In this document: positions 10,647-58,559 of the stretch, in pieces
Layout of the letters: each line of letters begins with the position of its first letter
How positions within the stretch are numbered: position 1 is the stretch's first letter
Assembly (NCBI GenBank): GCA_001600695.1
Contig: BCKQ01000015.1
Span: forward strand, 112,028-176,027
Length of the DNA: 64,000 bases
Source: Ascoidea asiatica JCM 7603
Lineage: Eukaryota > Fungi > Ascomycota
Direction of reading: 5' to 3'
Translations under genes and position numbers: made by a program
The notes under the pieces: generated by a model
Told to the model about the DNA's origin: nothing
What the model saw: only the letters and a program-made list of their open reading frames with translations
Database searches by the model: none

Positions 10647-10714
10647 TCCGATATAGAGTAACGGTGATCATACCTTTCACCGAGGAGACCCGGGTTCGAC
10701 TCCGGGTATCGGAA
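10647..10714 (+). pseudogene. Degenerate tRNA-Glu(UUC)
   Basis: Relative to 39514-39585: 4-nt deletion in the anticodon stem, T>A in the D-stem, C>G in the T-stem. Confidence 0.9.
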
Positions 10715-10836
10715 TAGAAGCATGTTAATTAACATTTTTCTTTATATTTTTTTTCAAGTTCTTGTCCTACAATTATATATTTTTTGCCCTAAATAAAAAT
10801 TAAAAAAAAATAAAAATAAAACTAAAAAAAAAAGGA

Positions 10837-10930
10837 CTCCTCATTAGGGGCTCGAACCCTAGACATTTCGGTTGCTCGAAATTAACAAATCCCTAAAAGC
10901 CGAACGCTCTACCAACTGAGCTAATGGGGA
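10837..10930 (-). tRNA. tRNA-Lys(UUU) with 21-nt intron
   Basis: TCCCCATTAGCTCAGTTGGTAGAGCGTTCGGCTTTTA-intron-ACCGAAATGTCTAGGGTTCGAGCCCCTAATGAGGAG. Confidence 0.95.
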
Positions 10931-11114
10931 TGAGTCCTGTTTCTTGGGTCTCTTTTTGAATCATGATAGAATGGTGTACATTGATGGAGTTGTTTGGATT
11001 TTTTAAGTCATTAAATTAAGTATACAGTATACTGTCATAAGGAATTGATTATATATGAAATCATTTATTTATTTGTTTATTTACTTTATTTTTTAATGGT
11101 TATATACTTTTCTA

Positions 11115-11477
11115 TTAATTATCAGTTTTTATATCATCTTTAATAACATTTTCTATTGGAATATCTTTATCTAAAAGTCTACCTTGTCTTTGACCAGTTT
11201 CACCATTAATTCTAATTAAAATATTATTTGGTAATAATTGACCTTCTTCAATATCTTTCCAATCATTACTAGGTTTAAAGATATTTAAATTTTTTCCTTT
11301 TAAGTTTTCATTTGAATTGACATTTGAATTTATATAATTTTTATAATTTGATATAATTTCATTATTTAAATTAAAAATTTCACCATTTATTTGAAAAATT
11401 GTTAAAAAAATTATAATTATTATTAATATAATTAAAATATATTTACGATTATTTAAAATTTCTTGATTTGAAAACAT
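11115..11477 (-). CDS. Small signal-anchored protein with a Sil1/Sls1 N-terminal-like motif
   Basis: Hydrophobic residues 13-30. FKPSNDWKDIEEGQLLPNNILIRINGETGQRQGRL resembles the Sil1 motif FxPTxEWQxVxxGQxLPxGLHVRxNxxTGxKEAKL. Confidence 0.7.
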   Translation of the reverse strand: MFSNQEILNNRKYILIILIIIIIFLTIFQINGEIFNLNNEIISNYKNYINSNVNSNENLKGKNLNIFKPSNDWKDIEEGQLLPNNILIRINGETGQRQGRLLDKDIPIENVIKDDIKTDN

Positions 11478-12072
11478 CTTTTGAGAATTAAAATTACATT
11501 GATTTCAATAATTAAATTAAATAATTATAAAATTTAATTGATTTATTATCCATTCACTTTACAGTCTTTAAAAACAAATTTAACACTTATGATATATTAT
11601 TCTTATTTCTTATTCCTATTTCAACTATTATTATTACTTGTAATAGATATAAATATAAATATAAATATAAATAAAGGGCTTTAAATCATTAGCCTTAAGT
11701 GATTTGCAATAATATTCATCTATTATTTTTTTTAATATCTACAGTATTACATATAATCCTATTTACAATATATTATTATTCATAATAATTTCATCATTTT
11801 CAAAAGAATATCTGAATTCAATGGGCTTAAAAATAAACAAAATCTGATTACGTAAGTGACAATTATCAAAAAATGAAACGTTTAAAGAAAAAAAAAAAAA
11901 AAAAAAAGGGTTTTGGGGAAGTCCTGTCCTGAATATTTAAAAACTTTGCATCTGTTTTTAAGGTTTAGTGCATGATTCAGACGGCGGTACTGTGAAGTGT
12001 TTCTATGTGCTATAATAGGGTTGTACAGATTTGTGCACACTTTTGCCTGCTTTTGACGCAACGCAAAACCCC

Positions 12073-12414
12073 AACTGTGGCGGGATGTTTGTGTGGCGTA
12101 GCAGCGAAATACGGGAGAAAAGCGCGCACCAAAAGCGCCATTACGTAATTTGCAAATGCTGCCAAGCCCGCAAATTCCTTTAATTACGCCAATAATCGTT
12201 TTTCCACACTTTTTCACACTTTTTCACACTTTTTCAACAATTTCAATATATTTTTTATATATTTCTAGCTGCAATGCAAATACTTTTAAATTATCGAGTA
12301 AAATGAAATATTTCAATAATAATGACAATAATAATGACAAGAATAATAACAATAACAATAATAAAATAATGGACTAAAACAAAACATGAAGTCAATTCAT
12401 AAACAGCCACAGTT
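12073..12414. promoter_or_regulatory. Two Met31/Met32-like AACTGTGGC sites (12073-12081 +, 12406-12414 -) and a TTACGTAA (12141-12148) upstream of the FMO gene
   Basis: Motifs read directly; they match the core of the Met31/32 consensus AAACTGTGGC. Confidence 0.5.
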
Positions 12415-12691
12415 CCCCTCGTGAAAATGATTCTAATAAGTGCTGATATATAAAAAAAAAAAAAAAAACATACCATAATTCTTTGGTTAAGAATTCAGTT
12501 GATTTATCCTTAAGAAAAAGAAAATTAACAGAAGATTAAAAAAAAAAAGCAAAAAAGCAAAAAAGCAAAAAAGCAATTAAAAAGCTTTGATTATAAATAA
12601 GACGAAATGTAATTGACTTTGAATATATGAATAGTAACAATAAAATATAGTTATATATACAGTATATATATTAAATATTCATAATTACAAA

Positions 12692-14778: not shown

Positions 14779-14795
14779 AAAAAATATTCATAAAT

Positions 14796-14813
14796 TGATT
14801 GATTGATTGATTA

Positions 14814-14846
<33 letters not shown>
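14796..14846. repeat. (GATT)n microsatellite
   Basis: Read directly. Confidence 0.9.
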
Positions 14847-26833: not shown

Positions 26834-26936
26834 CGTTACAGACAGGATTCGAACCTGCGCAGGATGAACCCAATGCCTGAACTGCTTTACACTGGGAATT
26901 AGCAGGGCATCGCCTTAACCTCTCGGCCACTGTAAC
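26834..26936 (-). tRNA. tRNA-Ser(GCU) with intron
   Basis: GTTACAGTGGCCGAGAGGTTAAGGCGATGCCCTGCTA-intron-AGGCATTGGGTTCATCCTGCGCAGGTTCGAATCCTGTCTGTAACG; long variable arm. Confidence 0.95.
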
Positions 26937-39513: not shown

Positions 39514-39585
39514 TCCGATATAGTGTAACGGTGATCATACCTCGCTTTCACCGAGGAGACCCGGGTTCGACTCCCGGTATCGGAA
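39514..39585 (+). tRNA. tRNA-Glu(UUC)
   Basis: Complete cloverleaf; anticodon arm CCTCG-CTTTCAC-CGAGG. Confidence 0.96.
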
Positions 39586-39705
39586 TAGAAGCATGTTAAT
39601 TAACATTTTTCTTTATATTTTTTTTCAAGTTCTTGTCCTACAATTATATATTTTTTGCCCTAAATAAAAATTAAAAAAAAATAAAAATAAAACTAAAAAA
39701 AAGGA

Positions 39706-39799
39706 CTCCTCATTAGGGGCTCGAACCCTAGACATTTCGGTTGCTCGAAATTAACAAATCCCTAAAAGCCGAACGCTCTACCAACTGAGCTAATGGGGA
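39706..39799 (-). tRNA. tRNA-Lys(UUU) with intron
   Basis: Identical to 10837-10930. Confidence 0.95.
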
Positions 39800-40245
39800 T
39801 GAGTCCTGTTTCTTGGGTTTCCTTCAAGTTTACCAGATTAAACAAAAAGGGTCTTCTTCTGTAAGGGTCCTTTCATAAACCCTTTTTAGACCCTTTTTAG
39901 ACCCTTTTTAATTTTTTTAATTTTTTTAAGTTTTTTTTATGTTTTTACAATCCCCATTATTTGCTTTATATCCATTGGATTATATCCAGTTTTTCAAATT
40001 TCTTTGATTCTACAACTTAACAATTTCAATAATGATAGTCATGATTTTTTAAATCTAACGAAAGCTTGTATGTAGTTGTCAGCTATTAGACTTTACTTTG
40101 ATCTAAAGTTATTGCAAACATACATACACTTTTCATAATATCTTTTTTATTTTACACTATTTAACAAAAATTATAAAAATTCTGATTTTACTTTCTACCT
40201 ATATTGAAATCTAGAAGAAAATGTACATTAATATTATAGACAACA

Positions 40246-42126
40246 TCATTTTTTTTTATTCTTTATTTTAATATTTCTCTTATTCAATACCTTATAAATA
40301 TCTTCAAAAGTAATAGTACAATTAAAATTTTTATTTTTTTCATAATTTTCTTGAATATATAATAAATTTTCAATAAAATTTATGTTTTTTAAATCCAATT
40401 CTAAATTTTTATTTTTTTTAAATAATTTTAATTCATTAATATCTTTATTAAATTTTCCAAATCTTGAAGTCCACCAATAAATATTTTCCTTAAATGGAAA
40501 ATTACATTTTAAATTAATTAAAATATTTGCTTTTTTAAATTTTTTTAATTCAAGATCTTCAAAAATTTCTATAGAATTATTTAAAATTTCTAAATTTTTT
40601 AAATTTTGTAAATTAAAAATATTTTCAATTTTTTTAATTTTATTTGAATTTAAATTTAAATATTTAAGTTTTTTTAATTTATTTATATTTTCTAAGATTT
40701 TAATTTGATTATTATTTAAATATAAAATTTTTAAATTTTTTAAATGATTTAAATTTTTAATTTTAATAATTTTATTATAACTTAAATCTAAAAAATTTAA
40801 AAATGATAAACCATGAATAAAATCAATTTTTTCAATTTGATTATTATTTAAATTTAAATAATTTAAATTATTAATTTTTGATAAAGATCTTATTGAAGAA
40901 ATTTTATTATTTGATAAATTTAAAAATTTTAAATTAATTAAATAATCAAAATTTGGAATTTTTTTAATATTATTATTATTAAAATCTAAAAAAATTAAAT
41001 TTTTTAAATTTTCAAAATTTTTAATTTTAGAAATATTATTATGTGATAAAATAAGAAATTTTAAATTATTTAAATTTAAAATACTTTGAAAAATTTCATT
41101 AATTGAATTAAATTTTAAATTTAAATAATTTAAATTTTTAAAATTTTTAAAATCATTATTTAAATCTATTAATCCATCAGAATATCTACGACTTAGTTCA
41201 AGTTTTTTTAAAGTTTTTAAATTACTCAAAATTTCTATAATTTCAGAAATATTTAAAAAATTAGATTTTGAAAAATCAATTGATTTAATTTTTTTTAAAT
41301 ATTTTAAAGGTTTTAATAAATCATTAGAAATAGAATTTTTAAAAGAAATTGATTTTAATTTAATTTCAAAAATATTTGGTATATTTTTTAAAAAATTTAA
41401 ATTATTTAAAATTGTATAATTTAAATTTAAAATTTTTAAATTTTTAAAAGATTTTAAAAAATTATCTGGAAATTTTTCAGAAAAATTATTAAAACTTAAA
41501 TTTAAATATTTTAAATTTTCTAAATTATTTAAATTTGTTAAATTATTTAAAATAGTTAATGGAAATTTTAAAAATTCATTTGAAATTCTAATATTTAAAT
41601 ATTTGAAATTTTTATTTGAAATATTTTCTAATATTGAAAATAAAGAAGAATTTATTGAACTTTCATTATTAATATTATTAATATTCTTATTAACACTTAT
41701 GAAATATAAAGAATTAAGATTTTTAAATAAATTAATTTCATTATTTATAATATTTTTAAATTTATTATTATTATAAGAATTATTAATAAATAAATCACCA
41801 ATAATAATATTTTTATAAGATTTTATCCAATTTATATTTGATTTAAAAGTAAAATTATTATTATCATTATTATCATTATTTTGTTTTAATCTTAAAATTG
41901 AATTTGGTTTAAATAATTTAAATTTATTATTTTGATAAAATTTATTAAAACCAGCATTATAAAATTGATTATCAACAAAAGAGAAAAAAAAAGTAAATGA
42001 ATTTAATCTTTCAGATGAAATTTTATAAATATTAATATTATTAGATAAAGTAAATAACCAACATTTATCTAAAGTTATATAATTAAATATTAATTTTAAA
42101 ATATGAATAGGAAGTTTATTAATCAT
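40246..42126 (-). CDS. F-box-like/LRR protein, paralog of 27307-29319
   Basis: LPIHILKLIFNYI F-box-like start, shared WLFTLSxNINIY motif, SDS22-type LRRs. Confidence 0.9.
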   Translation of the reverse strand: MINKLPIHILKLIFNYITLDKCWLFTLSNNINIYKISSERLNSFTFFFSFVDNQFYNAGFNKFYQNNKFKLFKPNSILRLKQNNDNNDNNNFTFKSNINWIKSYKNIIIGDLFINNSYNNNKFKNIINNEINLFKNLNSLYFISVNKNINNINNESSINSSLFSILENISNKNFKYLNIRISNEFLKFPLTILNNLTNLNNLENLKYLNLSFNNFSEKFPDNFLKSFKNLKILNLNYTILNNLNFLKNIPNIFEIKLKSISFKNSISNDLLKPLKYLKKIKSIDFSKSNFLNISEIIEILSNLKTLKKLELSRRYSDGLIDLNNDFKNFKNLNYLNLKFNSINEIFQSILNLNNLKFLILSHNNISKIKNFENLKNLIFLDFNNNNIKKIPNFDYLINLKFLNLSNNKISSIRSLSKINNLNYLNLNNNQIEKIDFIHGLSFLNFLDLSYNKIIKIKNLNHLKNLKILYLNNNQIKILENINKLKKLKYLNLNSNKIKKIENIFNLQNLKNLEILNNSIEIFEDLELKKFKKANILINLKCNFPFKENIYWWTSRFGKFNKDINELKLFKKNKNLELDLKNINFIENLLYIQENYEKNKNFNCTITFEDIYKVLNKRNIKIKNKKK

Positions 42127-42460
42127 TATTTATTCTGGATTTACATTAAGTGAGTTTACAACTCTTACAACTCTTTCTTTTTGAATTGAGAACATTTTTG
42201 AATCATATATATTGTTTTAGAAACTGCAATGAAGTTTGTCTGGTAAACATTATTGGAACAATAGATAATAACTGATTAGAAAGAAGATGAAGAAGAAAGA
42301 GGAAAGAAAGAATAAATAAATAAATAAAGAATAAATAAATAAAGGTTACTTCAGAATGGTAAATATGAAAAAGAGAGCAGAAATTGTAAAATAAACAAGC
42401 AGCACGTGAACAAGGCACGTGATCCGCAAAGGTCAGGTGAAACGGCGGAGCCAGGTTAGA

Positions 42461-42625
42461 GGTACTTCTTAAGAGACCATAAGTTTGGGTGCCCTTAATT
42501 GAGGCCGCATAATTGGTACTCCTTGTTTGAGTCCAGGTAAATGGTACTTCTTATTTGAAACCATTGTTCTGGTACTTTTTATTTAAGCAGTAAGACCAAC
42601 TAATTGGAACTCCTTATTTGAATCC
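42461..42625. repeat. Degenerate minisatellite of about 27-28 bp, 6 units, core GGTACTYCTTATTTGARNCC
   Basis: Units start at 42461, 42488, 42515, 42543, 42571 and 42606. Confidence 0.8.
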
Positions 42626-43136
42626 ACGTTTATGGGTCTGACTACTACAGATATACTACTTCTGCTGAATGTATTTCTGTGGTTGTTCAGATATATTTCC
42701 AAAATAGAATTTATACCTTCTTTTTATTGTGTTTTATTTTTTTACGCGTCGCAAGAGAACAATAGAAATGCACTTAGTACAACCTGCTGTTTTATAGTGT
42801 GTGTAAGCACTCTTTTGTAATTCTATTTATTTAGACTTGTATTGATGATGGAATATAAATCATTTACAATTACTAGTACAAAGTTCTATGGAATAATATT
42901 TCTTGATAAGAAACTTTCTGTAAACTACAAACAAAGTACAACTAATTTTTTTCAATTGAATAAAATGTTTATAAAAGATAAATATGGAAAAAAATAGTAA
43001 ATAAATATAAATATATATATAATACGTAATATTTGATTATTCACAATCTATCAAAGAAATTACTTATTAAAAATAATACCTTTTAAAAGATTAGAATATC
43101 AATATTTTTATTTATTTATTTCTTTAAAGAATAAAT

Positions 43137-46411: not shown

Positions 46412-48478
46412 ATGTCTAATTTAAAATGGGAAAATGATAATGAAAATTTTCAAATTGAAATTGTAATTTCAAGAGCAAAAAAAGTTAAATTACCAATTTT
46501 TTTATTATCTGAAAAGGAAAAATTATTAAATATTGCAAATTGTTCAGTTTTTGATGATCCTGAAATATTAAAAAATGAAATTGAAAGAGTAACTTCATTA
46601 AATGAAAAAGAAAATCAAAATTTTATAAGTTCTATTGATTCTTCAAAATGTTTACCGAATAGTTATTCTTGTATTAATACTGATTTAGGATTTTTACCTA
46701 AAAAAATAAAAAAAAAATATATACCTTCTAATAATGATATTGATAAAAATAATGATAAAGATTGTAATAATAATGATAATAATAATGATAATAATAATGA
46801 TAAAGATAATGATATTAATGACGATAAAGCTAACGAGAAAAAAGATGAAATATTCAGACATTCATTGGTTTTTATTTTAATTACTTATGGAAATGAAACT
46901 ATAAAACTTACTCCAGTAAAAGGTTCAATTTCAAATCCAATATTTAGAAAAGTAGTAAATTTTAATGTTAAAAATTACTCAAATAATATACTTATTGAAT
47001 TATTTTGCGATATTCCAAATTATTTAATTCCTAAGGAATATTTTGAAAAATATAAAGATGATTTTGATTTAAATTATCCAAATCAAGAAATATATATTGG
47101 AGAAAAAATCCTTTATTTAAATGAAGAATTTTTTAAAAATGATAGAAAAGCTAGAAAATTATTAAATAATAGTAATGTTCCACTTCTTGTTAATAATCCT
47201 GAACAAACTTCAACTTCATTTATTTCAATGTCAATAAAAGTTTTACCACCTTTTAAATTAAAAGAAGAGGAAATTAGTTTAAAAAATTTTAAAATTATGA
47301 AATTTATTGGTAAAGGAACATTTGGTGAAGTTTATCAAGTTTTAAAGAGAAATAATGGTAAAATATATGCTTTGAAAAGTATTGAAAAATTTCATATTAT
47401 AAAAAATATTGATAAAACAAACTATCATTCATATGAAACTGGAAATGGAAATGGAAATGAAAATGAAAATGAAATTCAAAATCAAAATCAAAATCAAAAT
47501 CAAAGAGAAGCAGAAATAGAAAAAGAAAAAAAAAATAAAATAATCAAAGCAATAATTGAAAAAAATATTTTAATGAAAATGAATAATCCTTTTATTATAT
47601 CATTACATTATTCTTTCCAAACTGTTAAAAAAGTTTATTTAATAACTGATTTTATTAATGGAGGAGAATTATTTCATCATTTAAGTAAAGAAAGAATATT
47701 TAATTTATATAGAAGTAAATTATATATTGCTGAAATTATATGTGCTTTAGAATATTTACATAATTCAAATATTATTTATAGAGATTTGAAACCAGAAAAT
47801 ATATTATTAGATCACCAAGGACATATAAAACTTTGTGATTTTGGATTAAGTAAGATTTCAGAACCAAATTTAAGAAAAAATAATGAAAATATAAAAACAA
47901 TTGCAAAAACATTTACATTTTGTGGATCTTCAAATTATCTGGCACCAGAAATTTTAAAACATAAAGGATATGATGAAAAAGTAGATTGGTGGGCATTAGG
48001 TATAATATTATTTGAGATGTTGATTGGTACTACACCATTTTATAAACCTAATTTAAATGAAATGATGAGATGCATAATTAATTCTCCACTTGAATTTCCA
48101 AAAGATTTTAATTCATCTGCTAAAGACCTTATTGAAAAATTATTGAATAAAGATCCTAATAAAAGAATTGGAGCAAATAATGGAAGTCAAGAAATTAAAA
48201 ACCATTCATTCTTTGAAAATTTGAATTGGAATAAAGTTATGAATAAAGAATATGAACCTTTATTTAAACCTGATGTAAAAGATGAAATTGATTGCAAAAT
48301 AATATCAAAATATTTGGAAGAAGTTGAAGAAACTGAAGAATTGAAAGAATTTCAAGAAAGGCTGGAAATCATTAAAGGAAAATATGAATATGAGTATTTA
48401 GGTAAATCTGATCAAGTTTTGTTCAAGAATTGGTCTTTTATAGGGGAAAGTGAATTTGAAAAACATCTGAAAGCTTGA
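46412..48478 (+). CDS. Divergent AGC kinase (Ypk1/Sch9-like)
   Basis: IGKGTFGEV, YALK, GGELFHHL, YRDLKPEN, LCDFGL, TFCG..YLAPE, C-terminal FKNWSF hydrophobic motif. Confidence 0.88.
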   Translation: MSNLKWENDNENFQIEIVISRAKKVKLPIFLLSEKEKLLNIANCSVFDDPEILKNEIERVTSLNEKENQNFISSIDSSKCLPNSYSCINTDLGFLPKKIKKKYIPSNNDIDKNNDKDCNNNDNNNDNNNDKDNDINDDKANEKKDEIFRHSLVFILITYGNETIKLTPVKGSISNPIFRKVVNFNVKNYSNNILIELFCDIPNYLIPKEYFEKYKDDFDLNYPNQEIYIGEKILYLNEEFFKNDRKARKLLNNSNVPLLVNNPEQTSTSFISMSIKVLPPFKLKEEEISLKNFKIMKFIGKGTFGEVYQVLKRNNGKIYALKSIEKFHIIKNIDKTNYHSYETGNGNGNENENEIQNQNQNQNQREAEIEKEKKNKIIKAIIEKNILMKMNNPFIISLHYSFQTVKKVYLITDFINGGELFHHLSKERIFNLYRSKLYIAEIICALEYLHNSNIIYRDLKPENILLDHQGHIKLCDFGLSKISEPNLRKNNENIKTIAKTFTFCGSSNYLAPEILKHKGYDEKVDWWALGIILFEMLIGTTPFYKPNLNEMMRCIINSPLEFPKDFNSSAKDLIEKLLNKDPNKRIGANNGSQEIKNHSFFENLNWNKVMNKEYEPLFKPDVKDEIDCKIISKYLEEVEETEELKEFQERLEIIKGKYEYEYLGKSDQVLFKNWSFIGESEFEKHLKA

Positions 48479-49044
48479 AGCAGTATTTAATTAATGACAA
48501 TTAATACATTTTTTTTGCTTTTTATCAATAAACATTTATTAAATAGCTGTAACTTGAATGTTTTACTGTTTTACTGTATTTGTATATTGAGCACAGGTAC
48601 CGAGTGTAGACACACACAAAAACAGCGGGTTGCACTAAGTGTATTTCCATTGTTCTCTTGCGACGCATAAAAAAATAAAAAACAACAAAAAGAAGGTGAA
48701 AGAATTCAATTTTGGAAATTCTTAACCAGACACAGAAATCCATTTGAATAATCATAAAATACTTGTTATACATACGTACGTTGTCTACTGACTATGATAC
48801 TATTCTCCATATTTGACATAGTTAAGTATCCTTCATTTACACTTTCTTCTTCTTTCCAAGCAGTTATATTAAACTATTCGAATAACGCTTAGCAAAGTCC
48901 ATTGGTTTTTTTTCAATAAATAATGTTATTTCTAATACAATTTAAATGACTCAAAAATGTTTTCAACTCAAAAAAAAGAGAAAGAGTTGTAAACTCACTT
49001 AAGCTTAAATACAAATTAAATCTTTTTTTGCATTCAGTAAATCA

Positions 49045-49150
49045 ATGATCAATAAACTTTCTCGTCATATTTCAAAACTAATATTTAAGTATATGACTTT
49101 AGATAAATGTTGATTATTTATTTTATTTGATAATATTAGTTTATACAAGG
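49045..49150 (+). pseudogene. 5' relic of the F-box/LRR gene
   Basis: Translates MINKLSRHISKLIFKYMTLDKC*LFILFDNISLYK versus MINKLPIHILKLIFNYITLDKCWLFTLSNNINIYK; TGA at 49111. Confidence 0.88.
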
Positions 49151-49746
49151 CTTTAACTAAGATATTTTAATTCCGGTGAAAATAAGAGTTCTTCAATTAG
49201 ATCCTAATATAAGGTAAATAAATTAAGCAAATTTAATTGAATTGAAGGCATTATATATAATAGATGATTTTAAAATAAAAAAACACATAACTTTGAATTA
49301 TGATCTAATATAAGGATATTCTTAACTTTTGTGTAATGGTCTAAAATTAAAAAGATCTTTTCAAGAAGAGTGTTGTGTTTGAGGTTTCTATATAACAAAG
49401 TAGGGTCCAATATATGGAGCTTGGAGGCTTTCTTGAAATATAAAAGATTACATTTATCATTATTGAGATTGTAAATTTATATGAATTCAAAAATTTCAAA
49501 AAAAATGGGATATGATTTATGTTTTAAATGGATAGGTAATCACTAAAAGAGTAATCCAGATTTCAACCAATATTTTCATAAAATATAGAAGAAATACAAG
49601 GAAATTGAATGGAATGAAAAAAGAATAAACATTCAAAATCATGTAATCTGAAAAAGAAAAAAATAAACCATTAAAAGAAATAGAAACAGAAGAGGACCCA
49701 TTTTTTAAAAACAGAAATTTCAAGGAGAACCAATAAACAGGACTCA

Positions 49747-49840
49747 TCCCCATTAGCTCAGTTGGTAGAGCGTTCGGCTTTTAGGGATTTGTTAATTTCG
49801 AGCAACCGAAATGTCTAGGGTTCGAGCCCCTAATGAGGAG
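49747..49840 (+). tRNA. tRNA-Lys(UUU) with intron
   Basis: Same sequence as the other three copies. Confidence 0.95.
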
Positions 49841-49971
49841 TCCTTTTTTTAGTTTTATTTTTTATTATTTTTAATTATTATCTAAGTTGGTTAGGGTAAA
49901 AAGTATAAAATTTCAGGACAAACAGTTAGAACAGGGAAAAAAAAAATAAACCTTCTGAATAGTAATTAGTG

Positions 49972-50043
49972 TTCCGATACCGGGAGTCGAACCCGGGTCT
50001 CCTCGGTGAAAGCGAGGTATGATCACCGTTACACTATATCGGA
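49972..50043 (-). tRNA. tRNA-Glu(UUC)
   Basis: Reverse complement identical to 39514-39585. Confidence 0.96.
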
Positions 50044-50165
50044 AAACCTTATAATTCTGTTTGGTTGTGTTTAAAGGTTGTCACGAGATGTTACTAAACC
50101 TATCACGTGTCTTGCTACTAATGTTTTGCTGGTGTTCCAGAGATAAAATCAACTAAGCATATTTT

Positions 50166-50181
50166 GCTGATTTAGCTCAGC

Positions 50182-50214
<33 letters not shown>

Positions 50215-50238
50215 TGTGTTCGATCCACAGAATTAGCA
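50166..50238 (+). tRNA. tRNA-Phe(GAA), intronless
   Basis: GCTGATTTAGCTCAGCTGGGAGAGCGTCAGA-CTGAAGA-TCTGAAGGTCCTGTGTTCGATCCACAGAATTAGCA. Confidence 0.96.
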
Positions 50239-51325
50239 GCTATTTTTTTTTAATTTGCTTTCTAATTGTTCTCCTCATTGTTATTTGTCAATCGTTTGTT
50301 GAAAGAAGGATTTTATGTGAAGATTTAAAGAACAAGTTTAAATTCCAAAAGAATATATTCATACTCAATTTGGTAAATAACAAGCTTTTTTGCTGTTATG
50401 TGTTTCAATCATCGATTATATTACTCTTAATTATATCAAAAAGTACAATTAAAATGGCAAATTTTGGTATCAAGAATTTAACTTGATGAGAATAATTTTA
50501 TAAACAAATCATAAGATTAAGTAAATATGATTTAACAAATTATATTTTAGATTGTAATATAATGGATGAAATGAAAAGTTGAATTCATTTCAATAAAATT
50601 ATTGCTTTTTAAAAAGACACTTTCATAAATTCAAATCCAAATCATGCAGATAATGAATTTAACTTTATCCCTATATTAAATTGAAGTTTAAAATCCAAAG
50701 TTTTATCAATTTTAGTTAAGGTTCCTTCAAAAATTATAATACTTTCTTACCAATAAAAATTTTAAAAAATGGTATCAATATTTAATACTTCAATAATATT
50801 TATATATAATCATCACATTTCAAAATTGAAGATACATGAAAAAAAAAATTCCGAAGATGAAAAATTAAAAAAAGGTAAACACTATATTAGTTTATTTTCC
50901 ATTGATATATGATTTTATTTTGAAATTGTTTAAACTAGGTAAAAGTGAAATCGATATTAAATAAAATAAAATAAAAAATTGAGACCAAAAGATTATTGGC
51001 TTTTAATGTAGAAAGAAAAATCTCAGGGTCTACTTTTTCAGCAAATATCTATCAACCTCTACTCAACTGTAGCTTCTATACACATTATTTCTATGTATTT
51101 ATTTGATTGAAAACTTACTGAAACAGGATTTCTTTCAAAATAATTTGAAGCAGATATTAAAAAGAAATCAACAGTTTCATCATTAGTAAAGGATATAGTT
51201 CAGAAATTAGATTTATTGAATTGAATCTCTATCAAAGAAAACTATTTTGTTTTGTGTATGTGTATCTACCCATCACTTATACGTTATATTGTCAATTCAG
51301 AGAAACTCCAAAAAGGCAACGAAAT

Positions 51326-51408
51326 GGAGGGTTGGCCGAGTGGTCTAAGGCGGTAGACTTAAGATCTACTGGGAAATTCCCGCGCGAGTTCGAACCTCGC
51401 ATCCTTCA
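51326..51408 (+). tRNA. tRNA-Leu(UAA)
   Basis: GGAGGGTTGGCCGAGTGGTCTAAGGCGGTAGA-CTTAAGA-TCTAC, variable arm, GTTCGAACC, ATCCTTCA. Confidence 0.96.
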
Positions 51409-51434
51409 TTCTTTATTTTTTTTCAGTGCTACTA

Positions 51435-53645
51435 TTTCAATGATCCGATTAAAGATGTTTCAATATCTTCACATAGAGATAATCTAGCTTTATTTGATAT
51501 TCCTCTAGGCTTAGATAAAGGTTTAGATTTTTCTTCTATATTATCTTTATCCGAAAAAACTAATAACAATAATGATTATGATGACGATAATAATAATAAT
51601 TTTGAAAATATTGCAAATATAGAAGATTTTAATGAAAATGATAACCGTATAATTGAATTGGATGAAAATTTAGATGATTTAGATATAAATTCAGATAATG
51701 ATGAAGCTAATGGTGAATATGGTGATTATAAATCAAAATCTTCAAAATTATCTAATCAGAACCAATCCGATAATAGAAAAAATGAAAATGATGAATTAGT
51801 ACCTCTTAATATTTCAATATCTTCTGCTTTAAAATCCGTTTCAAAATTAACAATTGAAAAATAAGAATTATGCTAATGTCGTTGATATTAATCATAAAAT
51901 TGATAATTTTAGTGATTTAGTACCAAATCCTACAAGAATTTGGCCTTTTGAATTAGATGTATTTCAAAAAGAAACCGTTTATCATTTAGAACAAAATGAC
52001 TCAGTATTCGTTGCTGCACATACTTCAATTGGTAAAACTGTTGTAGCCGAATATGCAATTGCTATGGCTCATAGAAATATGACAAAAACAATATATACAT
52101 CTCCAATAAAAGCTTTATGAAATCAAAAATTTAGAGATTTCAAAGAAATTTTCAAAGATATTGATATTGGTTTAGTTACTGGTGATGTTCAAATTAATCC
52201 TCATTCTGATTGTTTGATAATGACAACTGAAATTTTAAGAAGTATGTTTTATAGAGGTGCTGATCTTATAAGAGATGTAGAGTTCGTTATCTTTGACGAA
52301 GTTCATTATGTGAATGATATTGATAGAGGTGTAGTTTGGGAAGAAGTTATAATTATGTTACCTGAACATGTTAAATTTTTTTTATTATCTGCAACTGTTC
52401 TAAATACAATGGAATTTGCTGAATGGATTGGTAGAACTAAAAAAAAAGATATTTATGTGATTTCGACTCCAAAACGTCCAGTACCTTTAAAAATTTTAAT
52501 TTATACTAAAAAAAACAAGTATTCAAAGTTATTGATGGTCAACGAAATTTCAGTGAAATTCAATTTAAAAAACATAAAGAATTTTTTGAAAAAACTAATG
52601 AAAACTCAAATTATGATACTCGAGGAGGCCAAGGTAGCCAAAGAGGTGGAAAACCTGGAAATAATAATTATAGATCTGCTTGGGATGGTCCAAATAAAAA
52701 TACTTGGATTAATTTGGTTCAATTCCTTAAAATTAACAATCTTTTACTAGCTGTTATTTTTGTATTCAGTAAAAAAAGATGTGAAGAATATGCAGAAACT
52801 CTAATGAGTATAGATCTTACAACTTCTAAAGAAAAATTTCTTGTTAGAATGTTTATTGATAAAGCCGTTTCAAGATTGAAAAAAGAAGAAAGAGATTTAC
52901 CTCAAATTTTAAAAATGAGAGAATTTATAGCAAGAGGTGTTAGTGTTCATCATGGTGGTCTTCTACCAATTGTTAAAGAAGTTATTGAAAGTTTATTTTC
53001 AAAGTCTTTAGTTAAAGTTCTTTTTGCTACTGAAACTTTTGCAATGGGTTTGAATTTACCTACAAGAACAGTTGTTTTTGATAAACTAAAAAAAAACACA
53101 ACGGGATAAGTTTAAGAGATCTTTTACCTGGTAAATTTACTCAAATGTCTGAAAGAGCTGGTAGAAGAGGGTTAGATCCAATGGGTACTGTAATCGTAAT
53201 GACTTATAATAATCCTATAGATACAACCTCTTTCAAAAATGTAACGTTGGGAAATCCAACAAAATTGACTTCTCAGTTTAGGTTAACTTATATCATGATT
53301 TTAAATTTATTAAGAATTGAAGCTCTTAAAGTAGAAGAAATGATTAAACACTCATTCAGTGGAAATTCTTCAAGATATCTTCTTCCTGAACATGAAAAAA
53401 CTTTACTTAGTTTATAATTAAAAACAAAGCTAAAAGATATAAGCTCAAAATATGATAGTCAAGATTTTACTGATTGCCCTTACACTAAAGATGATCTTAT
53501 AAAAATGCATTCAATATTTACTGGTTATAATCTTTTAGTAACAGATATGGTAAAGAAGTCTTTCAGAAATCCTGTTCTTTTGAGAACATTTAAAGCTGGA
53601 AAATTAATTGTATTTGTGGATAATAATGGTTATTTAACACCAGGT
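51435..53645 (+). pseudogene. SKI2: Internal fragment of the SKI2 DExH helicase with multiple stops and frameshifts
   Basis: [83 protein letters not shown], spread over several frames. Confidence 0.92.
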
Positions 53646-53723
53646 AATTTTTGATCACGTTTTACTATTCAACAGAATAAAAAATTGAAAAAAAAAAAAG
53701 TGTTTGAAAATATCAAAAATATT

Positions 53724-53796
53724 TGGACAAGTCCGGAGTCGAACCGGAGACCTTCTGCACGCTAAGCAGACGCGCTACCAACTACGCCACATGCCC
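53724..53796 (-). tRNA. tRNA-Ala(AGC)
   Basis: GGGCATGTGGCGTAGTTGGTAGCGCGTCTGC-TTAGCGT-GCAGAAGGTCTCCGGTTCGACTCCGGACTTGTCCA. Confidence 0.95.
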
Positions 53797-55020
53797 AAAA
53801 CGATGTTTTTATTTTTATTATTAACACTAAGTTACAATGCGCTGTAAGAATTATTTTATTGCAATAAAATGATACGAAGTTGAATTGAGAAATATAAAGA
53901 AGAGCTTTGAATATTTCAGATTTGAAACAGTAAAATTAAATAATCAAATTCATTTTGCAAACATATGAATATGAACTTCATATTATAAGAAGAACCCATG
54001 TCAATATTAATTGCACCATACTTGCAAAGACTTGTTTAGCATCTTCAATTAATATGGAGCTCATTCTGGGTGCAAAAGGTCCGGGGTAAATTGAGGCCAA
54101 TAAAAAAAATAGGTACAGGATTTTCATATTATATTAATTTACTTGAGACAATAGAATTGAATGACTTAAATGTCCATGAAAATAGAGAGGATCTAGAAGC
54201 TAATATAAATGATCCAATAAACTGGATTTCTTCGTTGTAATCTATGCAACAACAATTAGGTTTGAAGATTAGTACTCTTATTTTTGAGGTTCCTTAAAGA
54301 ACAGCTCTTAATAGTGGAAGCCCTATTTTGAAATTACTAATATCGTATGTATCAGATTTATTATCTAAAAATTTATCAATTTCCTCATGCTTATTGGATT
54401 TAAATTTCACAACCGATATAATATTCAGAACAGAGTCCAGAAAGTTAGTTGACTCAAGGTTTTCAAATTTTATAAATAAGAGAGTAGGTATAAACACCAT
54501 AGATGTAATGAAGTTAATTTCGACTTGTAATCGATTTGATGTATCCTCCTTAGCTCAGTCTGGAAGTAGAAAATATTTATGATGAAAACAAAAAAATTTC
54601 AATATAAATTTTATAAAGGAATTATTTTCGGTGATTATTAGAAACTAATAAGTACCTTTTGTAGGAAATATGAAATCAATTACCATTGTTTTATTTTACA
54701 AAACATTTTCTTGAAGACCTTTTCTCTAGCAATATAACTGACTTATATTATCCTAATATATAGTTATTTCAGCATCTTTAACTCAATGATTATATTTTCC
54801 ATTACCCTTTCATATCTTAATCTTTATCTTGTTCATAGATTAAGAATACTGAATAATCTAATCATTAGCAAATATACAGTATAATAATTGTATCACAAAT
54901 ATCTAAATGAAAAAGAAAAAATCATGTTTGAAGTTTATCATAAAGAAGTCAACGCCACTAAAAGCTGGAAAAAAGAAGACAAGCAAGTAAAACACAAAAA
55001 AAATAATAAAAAATAAAGAA

Positions 55021-55099
55021 TGAAGGATGCGAGGTTCGAACTTGCGCGGAAATTTCACAGTAGATCTTAAGTCTACCACCGCCTTAGACTCGACCCTCC
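55021..55099 (-). pseudogene. Degenerate tRNA-Leu(UAA), inverted copy of 51326-51408 including about 35 bp of upstream flank
   Basis: D-arm deletions, a GGT insertion and a T-stem substitution; shared flank AATTCAGAGAAACTCCAAAAA..CAACGAAAT. Confidence 0.9.
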
Positions 55100-56222
55100 A
55101 TTTCGTTGTTTTTTTGGAGTTTCTCTGAATTAACAGTATGATCTTGCAACAGAAATGTATGATCTTGCAACAGAAATGCTTTCAATAAAAATTTTCTTTG
55201 TTTCAAATTCCTTACAAATGTTTCAATGCTTCAATGCTTCAATGCTTCAATGTTTAGAAAAGATTCCGCTCCGTGTCAGGATTATACTTTTCTAAATATC
55301 CGTAGTTGTTTCCGGGTGATTTCTTTTTATGTTTGGAACAGAATTAAAATGTTAATGAATTTAAACATTTTTAGATTTTTAGTTTTTTAAAATCATCAAA
55401 AGAAACAAGAAACTAAAAAAGTTTGAATCATGATTATAATTATAATTGACAATCATATTTATATTTCATTGTATTAAAACTTAAGTTTTTTCAATGATTT
55501 GGTAATCCTACTTTTATTTTAAAATATAATATTCATAAACATCTATGTTAAAAAGTATTTTGTGAAAAGGAAATTTAATTAATTTATCTTATAAAATTGA
55601 AAACAATATATAATAAGTTATCAAAACTGTGATTATTGTGATTATTGTTACTATTGTTATGATTATTCTAATTAACTTTTGAGAAAAAAAAAGGAGAGAA
55701 GTGAAAATTGATACTTGTAGCTTTGGTATTAGTGATAATTTTGTTTATCAACATCTTACTGAAAATAATGATAAAATTATTAGAACTTAAGTTATTATTA
55801 TCACCAAAAAAAGGTTGCATGAATTCTTTAATTCCATCTCTTTGATGTTTAATCTCAAGAGTTTAGATTAATGTTTTCTTCTCAAAAATCATTGATATTT
55901 TTTTTTTGCTTCTTTGAAATATTCTTTTCTCATAAATTTTATATTCTCTCAAGTGCTATTCATTTCATCTTATCTCATCTCATATATTTTATTCATATTT
56001 GAATTCTGTTAAAAAAAATCTTTAAAACGATAAGAAGAAAATCGATTTACAAATATTGCTATTAATTTAAAAAGAAAATAAAAACAGTTTATGTGATCTT
56101 TTGCTTTAATCTGTTTTATCTGCTTTATCCTTTAATTTATCTTATATCATTTGACTATATTCTATTTTGTTTATCACTTTATTTTTGTTTTTTTCTGAAT
56201 TATGGTACAAATTTAAGAATAT

Positions 56223-56408
56223 GTGAAATTTTTGAATGAAAAACTAGAGATAATTAAACAATTTACTCTTAGATCTATTATTGTTGGTTTAATTATTGGT
56301 TCTGTTGTTATAATTTCAATTTTTTTAATTTTTTTCACTGATGTTGAGAATGTATTTGTACAAAGTGTTGCAGTTGCAGTGGGTACTAGTCCTATAGCCT
56401 ATGGTTAA
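56223..56408 (+). pseudogene. Fragment of an OPT-family oligopeptide transporter (YGL114W-like)
   Basis: QFTLRSIIVGLIIGS joined to FTDVENVFVQSVAVAVGT; the normally intervening segment is missing and there is no ATG start. Confidence 0.75.
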
Positions 56409-56988
56409 AAACATTAAATACCTATGTTTTTACAATTTCTTGTTAACTTTCTGTTGTTACTTATCTCAAACAATCTAATTTACCAGATAATTCACTTATT
56501 TTTCTTACTAATCTGGGAATATACTGTATTTCAATTATTTATACTAATAGAAAACAAATTTCTATTTTTGCCACTTATAGTTTAGTTTAAGAAAATTTAA
56601 CTAAATTAATTTATGTCAAAATTTATTTATTATATTTACTGGTGATGTATTAATAATTGTACCAAAGTTATGTTTTATTTTTGATATATCAATTATCTCT
56701 TACATTAATTCAAATTTTTCTCAATTTAAAACAATTAAATTTGAAAATAAAAATCATCAGAAGCCTACTTTCTATTACATAACATTTTTATACATTATCA
56801 ATAAACAACTATTTTTACCTTTGAGACACACCATTGAATAAATTTTGAAATGGAAAAATTATTTCAATACTTCATGATTAAACAAGTTCTAATTCTAGTT
56901 CCAACTCCAATTATATAATTCAAACACTGAGTAATGTTTTGTTATAATAGCAAAATTTGACAAAGGAACAGCAAAAAAAAAATAAACA

Positions 56989-57012
56989 TGCTAATTCTGT
57001 GGATCGAACACA

Positions 57013-57045
<33 letters not shown>

Positions 57046-57061
57046 GCTGAGCTAAATCAGC
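56989..57061 (-). tRNA. tRNA-Phe(GAA), intronless
   Basis: Reverse complement identical to 50166-50238. Confidence 0.96.
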
Positions 57062-57183
57062 AAAATATGCTTAGTTGATTTTATCTCTGGAACACCAGCA
57101 AAACATTAGTAGCAAGACACGTGATAGGTTTAGTAACATCTCGTGACAACCTTTAAACACAACCAAACAGAATTATAAGGTTT

Positions 57184-57255
57184 TCCGATATAGTGTAACG
57201 GTGATCATACCTCGCTTTCACCGAGGAGACCCGGGTTCGACTCCCGGTATCGGAA
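57184..57255 (+). tRNA. tRNA-Glu(UUC)
   Basis: Identical to 39514-39585. Confidence 0.96.
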
Positions 57256-57387
57256 CACTAATTACTATTCAGAAGGTTTACTTTTTTTTTCCCTGTTCTA
57301 ACTGTTTGTCCTGAAATTTTATACTTTTTACCCTAACCAACTTAGATAATAATTAAAAATAATAAAAAATAAAACTAAAAAAAAGAA

Positions 57388-57481
57388 CTCCTCATTAGGG
57401 GCTCGAACCCTAGACATTTCGGTTGCTCGAAATTAACAAATCCCTAAAAGCCGAACGCTCTACCAACTGAGCTAATGGGGA
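57388..57481 (-). tRNA. tRNA-Lys(UUU) with intron
   Basis: Same sequence as the other copies. Confidence 0.95.
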
Positions 57482-58559
57482 TGAGTCCTGTTTATTGGGT
57501 CTCCTTGAAATTTCTGTTTTTAAAAAAAGGGTCCTCTTCTGTTTCTATTTCTTTTAATGGTTTATTGTCTTGAATTTATTGTTTAATTCTTTTCTTTTCT
57601 TTTTTTTTTGAGATTAAATGAAGTATTTTGAATTTATTTTTTATTAAATTCCTTTAATTTTATTAATCTACAATTTCAATAATAAGAACTGTATGCTTCC
57701 AGTAATGTTCTTTTCTATTCTTCCGTGAAAACAAAGAAAAGAATTCAAGAATAATAAATAAAGAATTCATTATAGTATTTAATCTGTATTCTTTTCTAGA
57801 AACATTATTTTTTCTTTTTTTTGTCAAAAGTTTTTAAATTTTGAATCTCATTAATTAAAAACCTTTGTTACTATACTTTTTTGTGAATATGTTTTTGATA
57901 AAACATTTAAAAATTTGAACAATTAACTCTCATAGAACTTTTTCATAGCCTACTAACTAGAATAATAAGTTCAATTTTAAATTCTAAATTCCATTGTTTT
58001 ATTATTATTATTCCAATTCATTGGGAAAAATTCTATTTTAAAACAAAAATTTTAATTTATGTGAATACACTGAACTTGGAAAACCTGTTTTAAGAAGAAA
58101 TACTATTACAACTCAACTGCTAGATAAATATATTGCTGTACAGACTTATTTACTCAGGTACCAGAACATTTTTATCTTTTCAATTTCATTAAAAATAGTT
58201 TTTCAAAATGTTTTTTTGAAAACTTTTTTTTATTTGAATTCTTTAAATAAATATCAAAAACTAAATATATGAATATCTCAATATTTCCAACATTTTAAAT
58301 TTTTATCTTTTCATCACTTATCAGTAATTACTTATTGTTCGCTTTTTTTATAAATTACTAATTAAACTTATTAATTGATTATTATCAATAATTAAAATAT
58401 AACTATTACTAGTAAAAATTAATAAATCCATTCACTCTTTTATAACATTTCAATTCCATATATCAATTTTTCTTTTATTAAAAACTAAAAGTGAATAAAT
58501 CTTTTTAGAACTAAAACAAAAATTTCAATACTTTTTTATTATAATTTTAAATTTCAAAA

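What the first reader, a model, noticed from the sequence alone, without database searches (positions are those of the whole stretch)
10647..57566. A convergent tRNA-Glu/tRNA-Lys cassette behaves as a dispersed duplicating unit (4 copies, 2 subfamilies)
The Glu(UUC)->spacer<-Lys(UUU) unit occurs at 10647-10930, 39514-39799, 49747-50043 (inverted) and 57184-57481. Copies 1 and 2 share a near-identical spacer A. Copies 3 and 4 share a related spacer B. Homology between copies 1, 2 and 4 starts essentially at nucleotide 1 of tRNA-Glu, giving three unrelated upstream contexts. Copy 1 matches copy 2 only to about 20 bp beyond tRNA-Lys, and its Glu gene has decayed while its spacer has not. Yeast tRNA paralogs normally do not share flanks. 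I infer that tRNA pairs act here as SINE-like or recombination-mobilised modules that drive local rearrangement.
Basis: partly seen in the sequence, partly recalled or inferred. Interest (0 to 1): 0.8.

Follow-up and report, generated by a model that had tools for sequence, protein, structure and literature searches.

The report
Duplicated tRNA cluster, not mobile element
Four copies of a tail-to-tail tRNA-Glu/tRNA-Lys gene pair really exist in this yeast region, but they look like pieces of a larger tRNA cluster copied by ordinary local DNA duplication and then kept alike by gene conversion, not like a jumping SINE-like element.

Summary
Four convergent Glu(UUC)/Lys(UUU, 21-nt intron) pairs sit at the stated coordinates, with two spacer types and a dead Glu in copy 1. 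Short-read contigs from two studies bridge copy 1's junctions.

The interpretation mostly does not hold.
- The genome (very probably Ascoidea asiatica) has only five full cassettes, plus relics, on two contigs.
- There are no target-site duplications, tails or LTRs, and the flanks are single-copy.
- The real unit is a Leu(UAA)/Phe(GAA)/Glu/Lys cluster family.
- Copies 2 and 3 share up to 3.3 kb of Lys-side flank, so they are an old inverted duplication.
- Copies 3 and 4 are 98-100% identical over about 600 bp. The Leu block of the same palindrome is only 76-88% identical and one Leu is dead. This indicates recent gene conversion inside an old palindrome.
- Two contig-4 copies share a flanking transporter gene.
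- "Homology starts at Glu nt 1" is true of all 13 Glu paralogs.
- The roughly 20 bp beyond Lys is a conserved Lys upstream block, 85-95% identical even between spacer types that are only 66-69% alike.

What copies 1 and 2 share uniquely is the 120-bp spacer. That fits short-tract gene conversion or gap repair anchored in the two tRNA genes. A patch-type ectopic duplication of the pair is not excluded.

The finding is ordinary, of modest interest. The scan had already noted the same palindromes in this window.

The parts
10647..10714 (+). Copy 1 tRNA-Glu(UUC) pseudogene (T11A, 4-nt anticodon-stem deletion, T-stem mismatch)
   Evidence: Rfam 31.3 bits against 66.1 for intact copies. ARAGORN does not call it. 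Alignment. Read contigs confirm the sequence.
10715..10836 (.). Copy 1 spacer A: Glu trailer and T-run, a roughly 45-bp conserved core, then the Lys terminator A-run
   Evidence: 120 of 122 columns identical to copy 2. No other genomic copy.
10837..10930 (-). Copy 1 tRNA-Lys(UUU) with 21-nt intron
10931..10950 (-). Conserved upstream block of Lys, positions -1 to -20 (copy 1)
   Evidence: 85-95% identical among all cassettes. The last 8 nt are shared by nearly all 13 Lys(UUU) genes.
39514..39585 (+). Copy 2 tRNA-Glu(UUC), intact
39586..39705 (.). Copy 2 spacer A
39706..39799 (-). Copy 2 tRNA-Lys(UUU) with intron
39514..42812 (.). Copy 2 arm of the old inverted duplication (cassette, LRR gene 40246-42126, and beyond)
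   Evidence: Collinear blastn pieces against 50043-48602 at 70-84%. LRR Pfam hits.
48602..50043 (.). Copy 3 arm of the same inverted duplication. About 1.8 kb of the LRR gene is missing here.
49747..49840 (+). Copy 3 tRNA-Lys(UUU) with intron
49841..49971 (.). Copy 3 spacer B
49972..50043 (-). Copy 3 tRNA-Glu(UUC)
50166..50238 (+). tRNA-Phe(GAA), divergent from copy 3 Glu and part of the repeated unit
49662..50259 (.). 98-100% identity tract of copy 3 (Phe, Glu, Lys and 85 bp), inverted partner of 56970-57566
   Evidence: (I2, I4)
56970..57566 (.). 98-100% identity tract of copy 4
56989..57061 (-). tRNA-Phe(GAA) of copy 4
57184..57255 (+). Copy 4 tRNA-Glu(UUC)
57256..57387 (.). Copy 4 spacer B. 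No Rfam family and no stable fold.
57388..57481 (-). Copy 4 tRNA-Lys(UUU) with intron
51325..51409 (+). tRNA-Leu(UAA), inner marker of the copy 3 side of the palindrome
   Evidence: Leu(UAA) holds the same position in c5 and c7.
55008..55217 (-). Degenerate tRNA-Leu(UAA) pseudogene with flank, mirror of 51216-51421 at 76-88% identity
   Evidence: (I11). ARAGORN does not call it.

Best explanation
The Glu/Lys pairs are members of one tRNA cluster family, Leu(UAA) ... <-Phe(GAA) Glu(UUC)-> <-Lys(UUU). The genome is an AT-rich budding yeast, very probably Ascoidea asiatica.

How the family spread:
1. It spread at the DNA level by local, mostly inverted, segmental duplications that carried neighbouring genes along.
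2. The copies then decayed piecemeal: loss of Phe, death of Glu or Leu, loss of Lys, and divergence or replacement of the flanks.
3. Short-tract interlocus gene conversion (double-strand-gap repair) uses the invariant tRNA genes as homology anchors. It re-homogenises what lies between them, so the spacer hitch-hikes.

This gives the two near-identical pairs. Copies 3/4 are a converted core inside an old palindrome. Copies 1/2 share spacer A, copied between two pre-existing pairs, probably from copy 2 to copy 1.

Shown: the shared flanks, the identity steps, the copy number, and the absence of transposon hallmarks.
Inferred: conversion as the homogenising process, its direction, and that copy 1 was already a Glu/Lys pair before it received spacer A.
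For: 1. Copy number and spread. Only 5 full cassettes exist (4 in the window plus C4:1412157). Relics are C4:1139249 (Glu/Lys with an unrelated 287-bp spacer and a degenerating Lys), C4:1454636 (Phe/Glu without Lys) and C15:236992 (half a Phe, Glu, a spacer-B-like core, no Lys). Spacers A and B occur nowhere else.

2. Shared flanks.
- c2/c3 are collinear up to 3.3 kb on the Lys side at 70-84%, with a 1.8-kb deletion in c3.
- c5/c7 share a transporter gene at 76-79%.
- Leu(UAA) lies 1.2-1.8 kb beyond Phe in c3, c5 and c7, and as a relic beside c4.

3. Identity steps. In c3/c4, Phe, the Phe-Glu spacer (122/122), Glu, the Glu-Lys spacer (98%), Lys and 85 bp beyond are 98-100% identical. The Leu block of the same palindrome is 76-88% identical and one Leu is a pseudogene. 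Beyond the tract, identity falls to the ~0.55 background.

4. Incongruence. c2 groups with c1 by spacer (98%) but with c3 by flank. Spacers A and B are 66-68% alike, about the same as the c2/c3 flank divergence.

5. The apparent sharp ends are generic. All 13 Glu(UUC) paralogs lose similarity at nt -1. Lys -1 to -20 is 85-95% identical among all cassettes, and its last 8 nt are shared by almost all 13 Lys genes.

6. The four-gamete test fails between two sites 9 nt apart in the Lys intron.

7. c1 is real. Contigs of two studies bridge its junctions at single-copy depth.

8. Literature.
- tDNA clusters are unstable and linked to replication-fork barriers and rearrangements (PMC2888827).
- The sister genus Saccharomycopsis has many macro-palindromes with roughly 7-kb spacers (PMC13148404).
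Against: - For c1 I found no flank paralogy with any other copy at DNA or protein level. Its prior existence as a Glu/Lys pair is therefore inferred, from c6 as a precedent and from a few bases of residual similarity at Lys -20 to -31.
- The anchors are short: 72 nt of Glu, and 94 nt of Lys plus the 20-nt upstream block.
- c1's Glu has 3 changes in 72 nt against 1 in about 233 nt for the rest of the tract. That needs either a tract that began near the Glu 3' end or later mutation concentrated in Glu.
- The Glu-Lys spacer core is better kept between contigs (69%) than the Phe-Glu spacer (57%, background level). Conversion alone does not obviously explain this.
- No outgroup or second strain was available to show an occupied or empty site. 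X1, X2 and X3 show no differences and may be the same strain.
Confidence: 0.68

Rival explanations
1. Patch-type ectopic duplication. A roughly 310-bp DNA fragment spanning exactly the two Pol III units, from the Glu 5' end to about 20 bp upstream of Lys, was copied from c2 into a previously empty site at c1. The route would be capture of a fragment, or template switching, at a break. The two transcription complexes or fork barriers would define the fragment ends. This is the recombination-mobilised module in the reader's sense.
For: - c1 and c2 are 97% identical over 315 bp and background-level outside it. Both flanks are unique in the genome.
- c1 shows no flank paralogy to any family member.
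- Other tRNA-bounded blocks exist. The Lys genes at C2:2103890 and C2:2205996 share 381 bp that ends 14 bp past the Lys 3' end.
- Duplication ends in the window cluster near tRNA genes.
Against: - There is only one candidate event.
- The ends cannot be placed, because Glu and Lys -1 to -20 are conserved in all paralogs. The uniquely shared part is just the spacer.
- No informative microhomology or filler was seen at the junctions (2 bp at most).
- The relic c8 and the c6-related locus on contig 1 break inside the unit, not at tRNA ends.
Confidence: 0.15
2. SINE-like retroposition of a tRNA-derived unit through an RNA intermediate.
For: Homology appears to start at a tRNA 5' end, and the contexts of copies 1, 2 and 4 are unrelated upstream of Glu.
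Against: - The two genes are convergent, so no single Pol III transcript can contain both.
- The Lys intron is retained.
- Each gene is followed by its own T-run terminator inside the spacer.
- There is no A-rich or LINE-like tail at either end and no target-site duplication.
- Only 5 copies exist, on two contigs.
Confidence: 0.02
3. Selection rather than exchange. The Glu-Lys spacer holds a functional element, such as a shared terminator or insulator, or a TFIIIC- or origin-type site. The pair would then be conserved as a functional unit, and similarity would reflect constraint.
For: - A roughly 45-bp core between the two terminators is recognisable in spacers A, B, the contig-4 copy and the relic c8.
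- In the c3/c5 comparison the Glu-Lys spacer (69%) is better kept than the Phe-Glu spacer (57%).
Against: - Constraint cannot give 98-100% identity across T/A runs and trailers in c1/c2 and c3/c4 while types A and B differ by a third.
- c6 works with an unrelated 287-bp spacer.
- The spacer has no Rfam family and folds no better than shuffled sequence.
- The core was not found anywhere else in the genome.
Confidence: 0.1
4. Assembly artefact: the copies are collapsed or mis-joined repeats of a scaffold-level short-read assembly.
For: The assembly has 71 contigs and contains Ns (locus L011). The c3/c4 arms of about 600 bp at 98% cannot be phased by short reads, so the orientation of the 6.7-kb interior is untested.
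Against: - Contigs from two studies bridge both c1 junctions and carry the dead Glu at single-copy depth. The Lys unitig has about 8-fold depth, as expected for a multi-copy gene.
- Each copy has its own unique flanks and private differences.
Confidence: 0.03

Closest known systems
Concerted evolution of dispersed tRNA genes by intergenic (ectopic) gene conversion. The classic case is the S. pombe tRNA-Ser (sup3, sup9, sup12) dimeric tRNA-Ser/tRNA-Met genes, cited in PMC3113579 as Munz et al. 1982 and Kohli et al. 1984. The detail that they are dimeric is from my own knowledge.
   Same: Unlinked or distant tRNA gene units keep near-identical sequence while their flanks are unrelated. The exchanged tract is short and bounded by the extent of homology. 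A two-gene tRNA unit is the exchanged block.
   Different: Here the two genes are convergent and separately terminated, not a co-transcribed tandem dimer. Conversion is inferred from sequence patterns, not observed genetically. The non-coding spacer between the genes is what reveals the exchange.
Segmental and palindromic duplications in yeasts, and unstable tDNA clusters (PMC2888827; PMC2518615; macro-palindromes in Saccharomycopsis schoenii, PMC13148404)
   Same: The duplications are local, span tens of kb, are often inverted and carry genes. tRNA genes lie at or near the boundaries. Duplicated copies decay quickly.
   Different: The density is unusual for a budding yeast: 17 tRNA genes or relics in 64 kb. 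Orientation alternates (+, -, +) across three cassettes. No mechanism, whether fork barrier or template switch, was tested here.
tRNA-derived SINEs
   Same: There is a Pol III gene at the edge of a repeated block, and some copies sit in unrelated contexts.
   Different: The block is not a single transcription unit. It has no tail and no target-site duplication, its copy number is very low, and most copies share flanks.
Origin-dependent inverted-repeat amplification (ODIRA) type inverted triplication (PMC10766186)
   Same: Three copies lie in direct, inverted, direct order. The convergent tRNA genes provide short interrupted inverted repeats (the B-box regions).
   Different: The two turn-around regions are 5.8 and 6.7 kb of different, partly unique content. 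The three copies do not share the same segment, and their ages differ (66-84% against 98%).

Membership tests
SINE / tRNA-derived retroposon | One Pol III transcription unit spanning the whole repeated block | tested here: not met
   The two genes are convergent. Each has its own T-run terminator inside the spacer.
SINE / tRNA-derived retroposon | Target-site duplications and a 3' A-rich or LINE-derived tail | tested here: not met
   Junction sequences of c1 and c2 share no direct repeat of 5 nt or more. The ends are a tRNA 5' end and a Lys upstream block, not a tail.
SINE / tRNA-derived retroposon | Many dispersed copies | tested here: not met
   5 full cassettes plus relics, on contigs 15 and 4, with one relic relative on contig 1. 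The spacers have no other match.
Segmental duplication | Homology continues beyond the tRNA genes into neighbouring genes, collinearly | tested here: met
   c2/c3 share up to 3.3 kb. c5/c7 share a transporter gene. c3/c4 share the Leu block. Not met for c1.
Interlocus gene conversion (concerted evolution) | High-identity tract embedded in older, lower-identity paralogy | tested here: met
   In c3/c4, about 600 bp is 98-100% identical, against 76-88% for the Leu block of the same palindrome, where one Leu is dead.
Interlocus gene conversion (concerted evolution) | Conflicting relationships along the sequence | tested here: met
   c2 is nearest to c1 in the spacer but nearest to c3 in the flank. 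The four-gamete test fails in the Lys intron.
Interlocus gene conversion (concerted evolution) | The recipient locus existed before the exchange (c1) | tested here: inconclusive
   No flank paralogy for c1. The only support is the precedent of c6 and a few residual matches at Lys -20 to -31.
Ty3-like or LTR-mediated flank exchange at Pol III genes | Solo LTR or other repeat abutting the junction | tested here: not met
   The flanks of c1 and c2 are single-copy in the genome apart from simple repeats.
ODIRA-type inverted triplication | Same segment three times, with junctions at closely spaced short inverted repeats | tested here: not met
   The orientation pattern fits. However, the interiors are 5.8 and 6.7 kb with different content, and the copies differ in age.
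Structured RNA or known ncRNA in the spacer | Rfam match, or a fold better than shuffles | tested here: not met
   No hit better than E=9. z-scores ran from -0.4 to +2.7.

The most novel reading that the evidence does not exclude
A convergent tRNA pair, bounded on both sides by Pol III complexes or fork barriers, is excised or copied as a discrete roughly 0.3-kb DNA patch. The patch is then pasted into unrelated sites, with copy 1 as the example. This would be a transposase-free, RNA-free way of moving tRNA genes and seeding new palindromes.
Probability: 0.12. Interest if true: 0.7.

Novelty: new member of a known kind. Interest (0 to 1): 0.3.

Why it matters
The locus gives a clear worked example, in a little-studied yeast with an unusual genetic code, of how tRNA gene families turn over. 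They move by local inverted duplication and piecemeal decay, with gene conversion anchored in the tRNA genes themselves.

It also shows why sharp homology ends at tRNA boundaries should not be read as transposon ends. For annotation, it corrects the Lys(UUU) intron calls, flags two tRNA pseudogenes, and warns that this region needs long reads.

If the minority reading (patch mobilisation of a Pol III-bounded pair) were right, it would be a new route of tRNA gene dispersal.

Tried and rejected
- **Dictyostelid origin.** This was my first guess from 23% GC and the tRNA density. I rejected it: RNR2 is 83% identical to Ascoidea rubescens and the top hits are all budding yeasts. The 71-contig count matches the A. 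asiatica assembly listed in PMC6041473.
- **Synteny with A. rubescens.** The region around RNR2 there has no tRNA within 10 kb on either side and no shared neighbours, so it gives no empty-site test. An exact-protein look-up of the window's own RNR2 found nothing.
- **LTR or other repeats at the junctions.** None; the flanks are unique.
- **Residual homology upstream of Glu in c1, c2 and c6.** None above shuffles.
- **Protein-level paralogy of c1's flanks.** Only distant transporter-family similarity at 26-39% amino-acid identity. A tblastx hint of a shared GH28 gene beside c2 and c6 was not confirmed by tblastn.
- **Spacer as an RNA.** No family and no stable fold.
- **Genome-wide tRNA census through RF00005.** Only 63 of about 1,700 candidates were scored, so it is unusable for statistics.
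- **Centromere reading of the c3/c4 palindrome.** Unlikely. The interior is a decayed Mtr4-like helicase gene plus tRNAs. Centromeres of the sister genus are 26-34-kb AT-rich cores with Copia remnants.
Full report
**What the genome is.** The window is G000:C15:112028-176027 of a 20.3-Mb, 71-contig assembly with about 23% GC. Its ribonucleotide reductase small subunit is closest to Ascoidea rubescens (83% identity over 99% of the protein). All other top hits are budding yeasts. The Ascoidea asiatica NRRL Y-17576 assembly is listed as BCKQ01000001-BCKQ01000071, which is 71 records (PMC6041473). I therefore infer A. asiatica. This species decodes CUG ambiguously, but that does not affect anything here.

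**Checking the observation.** ARAGORN and Rfam find 17 tRNA genes or relics in the 64 kb. They include the four Glu(UUC)/94-nt-tRNA pairs at the stated coordinates.
- The 94-nt gene is miscalled Leu(UAG) or Ala(AGC) in the window. With the canonical intron position (after nt 37) the anticodon loop reads C-U-UUU-A-A with a 21-nt intron. ARAGORN calls near-identical copies elsewhere Lys(UUU) i(38,21).
- Copy 1's Glu scores 31 bits against 66. It has T11A, a 4-nt deletion that removes half the anticodon stem, and a T-stem mismatch.
- c1/c2 are 96.8% identical over 315 bp. c3/c4 are 98.2% identical over 599 bp. Type A versus type B is about 84% over the cassette and 66-68% in the spacer.
- Logan contigs of two studies bridge unique left flank, dead Glu, spacer A and the Lys 3' end (X1: 9860-10855; X2: 9188-10854; no differences). 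A 753-nt contig bridges Lys into the right flank. Depth is single-copy (about 48) on the flanks and about 8-fold on the Lys unitig.

The other three copies were not checked with reads because only one call was allowed.

1. The unit is bigger than a pair.
 - In c3 and c4 a tRNA-Phe(GAA) lies divergently 122 bp upstream of Glu, inside the 98% block.
 - A tRNA-Leu(UAA) lies 1.1-1.9 kb further on. It is intact on the c3 side and a degenerate relic on the c4 side.

2. The family extends beyond the window.
 - C4:1412157 (c5) has Thr, Leu(UAA), Phe, Glu and Lys with a third spacer type.
 - C4:1454636 (c7) has Leu, Phe and Glu but no Lys.
 - C4:1139249 (c6) has Glu/Lys with an unrelated 287-bp spacer and a degenerating Lys. 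A solo Glu on contig 1 shares about 190 bp of that spacer.
 - C15:236992 (c8) has half a Phe, the Phe-Glu spacer, Glu and a spacer-B-like core, with Lys missing.

3. Spacers A and B have no other match in the genome. The flanks of c1 and c2 are single-copy.

The answer is five full copies, no target-site duplications, no tails, no LTRs, and at least two relics whose homology ends inside the unit rather than at a tRNA end.

**Most copies share flanks.**
- c2 and c3 face each other across 9.9 kb. Their Lys-side flanks are collinear for 3.3 kb versus 1.4 kb at 70-84%. The c3 arm lacks about 1.8 kb of the LRR gene that sits beside c2.
- c3 and c4 face each other across 6.7 kb, with the Phe sides inward. 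The interior holds Leu, Ala(AGC), the Leu relic and a frame-broken Mtr4-like helicase gene.
- c5 and c7, 42 kb apart on contig 4, share a major-facilitator gene at 76-79%.
- The window holds other old duplications as well: a transporter gene pair in inverted orientation at 88.6%, with tRNA-Thr and tRNA-Gln 200-320 bp inside the inner ends, and an LRR gene pair.

These are segmental duplications, not insertions of a small element. The sister genus Saccharomycopsis is reported to have numerous macro-palindromes, some with spacers of about 7 kb (PMC13148404).

**Identity steps point to gene conversion.** Within the c3/c4 palindrome, the Phe gene, the 122-bp Phe-Glu spacer (122/122), Glu, the Glu-Lys spacer (129/131), Lys and the next 85 bp are 98-100% identical. 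Outside that tract identity drops to the roughly 0.55 that unrelated AT-rich DNA gives in the same alignment. The only other recognisable mirror block, around Leu(UAA), is 76-88% identical, and one Leu there is a pseudogene. A single recent duplication would not leave a dead, 12-24% diverged Leu next to a flawless Phe-Glu-Lys block. An old palindrome whose core was recently homogenised explains it.

Relationships also conflict along c2. By spacer it pairs with c1 (98%). By flank it pairs with c3. Its spacer differs from c3's about as much as their flanks do. Two polymorphic sites 9 nt apart in the Lys intron show all four combinations among the 12 intact Lys genes. This is weak support for exchange among Lys paralogs.

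**Why the sharp ends at tRNA boundaries are not element ends.**
- All 13 Glu(UUC) genes are (near-)identical, and none shares any upstream sequence with another outside the Phe-bearing copies. Homology starting at Glu nt 1 is what any two Glu paralogs show.
- On the other side, the 20 nt upstream of Lys are 85-95% identical among all cassettes, even where the spacers are only 66-69% alike. The last 8 nt recur upstream of nearly all 13 Lys(UUU) genes, solo ones included. That block behaves as a conserved leader or start-site region of this gene. Its function was not tested.
- What c1 and c2 share uniquely is therefore only the 120-bp spacer plus the Glu trailer. The exchange that made them alike could have begun and ended anywhere inside the two tRNA genes.

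Repair of a break or gap in one pair, templated by another pair and anchored in the Glu and Lys genes, would copy exactly that. If the tract began near the 3' end of Glu, c1's Glu could be an old pseudogene beside a freshly copied spacer. The alternative is that Glu mutated after a full-length copy: 3 changes in 72 nt against 1 in about 233 nt. Intergenic conversion among dispersed tRNA genes is long established in fission yeast, and gene conversion is the accepted way multicopy tRNA genes stay identical (PMC3113579).

**What remains open.**
- For c1 I could not show that a Glu/Lys pair pre-existed. Its flanks have no paralogy to any other copy, and the residual similarity at Lys -20 to -31 is a handful of bases.
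- A patch-type copy of the pair into an empty site is therefore not excluded. I give it about 15%.
- Duplication boundaries in this window do lie near tRNA genes more often than the 14% of sequence within 320 bp of a tRNA would predict. The events are few, paired and partly defined by the conserved tRNAs themselves, so I offer no p-value. The association agrees with published links between tDNA clusters, fork barriers and rearrangements (PMC2888827).
- The roughly 45-bp spacer core is kept better than the Phe-Glu spacer between contigs (69% against 57%) and is still visible in relic c8. It has no RNA family, no fold and no other genomic copy. Whether it is weakly constrained or merely hitch-hikes is unresolved.

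**Verdict.** The SINE-like reading is rejected. The locus is a tRNA cluster family shaped by local inverted segmental duplication, decay and short-tract conversion. That is a known kind of process, seen here in a new and unusually tRNA-dense yeast region. The scan's other notes on this window (palindromes at 39514-50043 and 49662-57566, and the LRR family next to tRNA genes) describe the same structures, and the checks above bear them out. Interest is modest (0.3).

Noticed in passing
window 11905-12205: A roughly 300-bp GC-rich island in otherwise 23%-GC DNA. It is bounded by a long A/T run on one side and three T5 runs on the other, and is single-copy. It has no Rfam hit at gathering score, and the best hit has E=0.48. 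It could be an unannotated Pol III or other small RNA gene.
   Followed up: partly
window 51854-53417 (+): Frame-broken remains of an Mtr4/Ski2-like DEAD-box helicase gene (DEAD, Helicase_C and MTR4 stalk domains spread over four successive ORFs). They lie in the interior of the c3/c4 palindrome, followed by tRNA-Ala(AGC) at 53723-53797.
   Followed up: partly
window 839-2497 and 7888-9442: Inverted duplication of a sugar-transporter (MFS) gene at 88.6% identity. tRNA-Thr(UGU) and tRNA-Gln(UUG) lie 318 and 203 bp inside its inner ends. One more tRNA sits just before the window start, at C15:111761.
   Followed up: partly
window 26834-26936 and 27307-29370; 39706-39799 and 40246-42126: Paralogous LRR genes (64-69% DNA identity). 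Each ends a few hundred bp from an intron-containing tRNA gene: Ser(GCU) and Lys(UUU) respectively.
   Followed up: no
L011 (G000:C2:2103890) and L012 (G000:C2:2205996): Two Lys(UUU) genes 102 kb apart in inverted orientation share 381 bp at 96%: the gene plus about 270 bp of 5' flank. The block ends about 14 bp past the Lys 3' end. L011 contains Ns.
   Followed up: partly
L007 (G000:C19:230392) and L008 (G000:C19:181470): A second repeated tRNA cluster type, Lys(UUU)->Ala(UGC)->...<-Leu(UAA), appears twice 49 kb apart on contig 19 with spacers of different length. Clustered and duplicated tRNA genes therefore look common in this genome.
   Followed up: no
L021 / G000:C4:1454636-1454707: A Glu(UUC) variant with two compensatory acceptor-stem changes (6-67 and 7-66 become G-C) and one A-C mismatch. 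It may be a distinct isodecoder or a decaying copy.
   Followed up: no
window 50100-50130, 57095-57125; L005 about 1440-1480: The divergent Phe/Glu intergenic spacer keeps a short motif (...CGTGAC...) and a CACGTGA-type E-box in copies that are otherwise at background similarity. This may be a shared upstream element.
   Followed up: no
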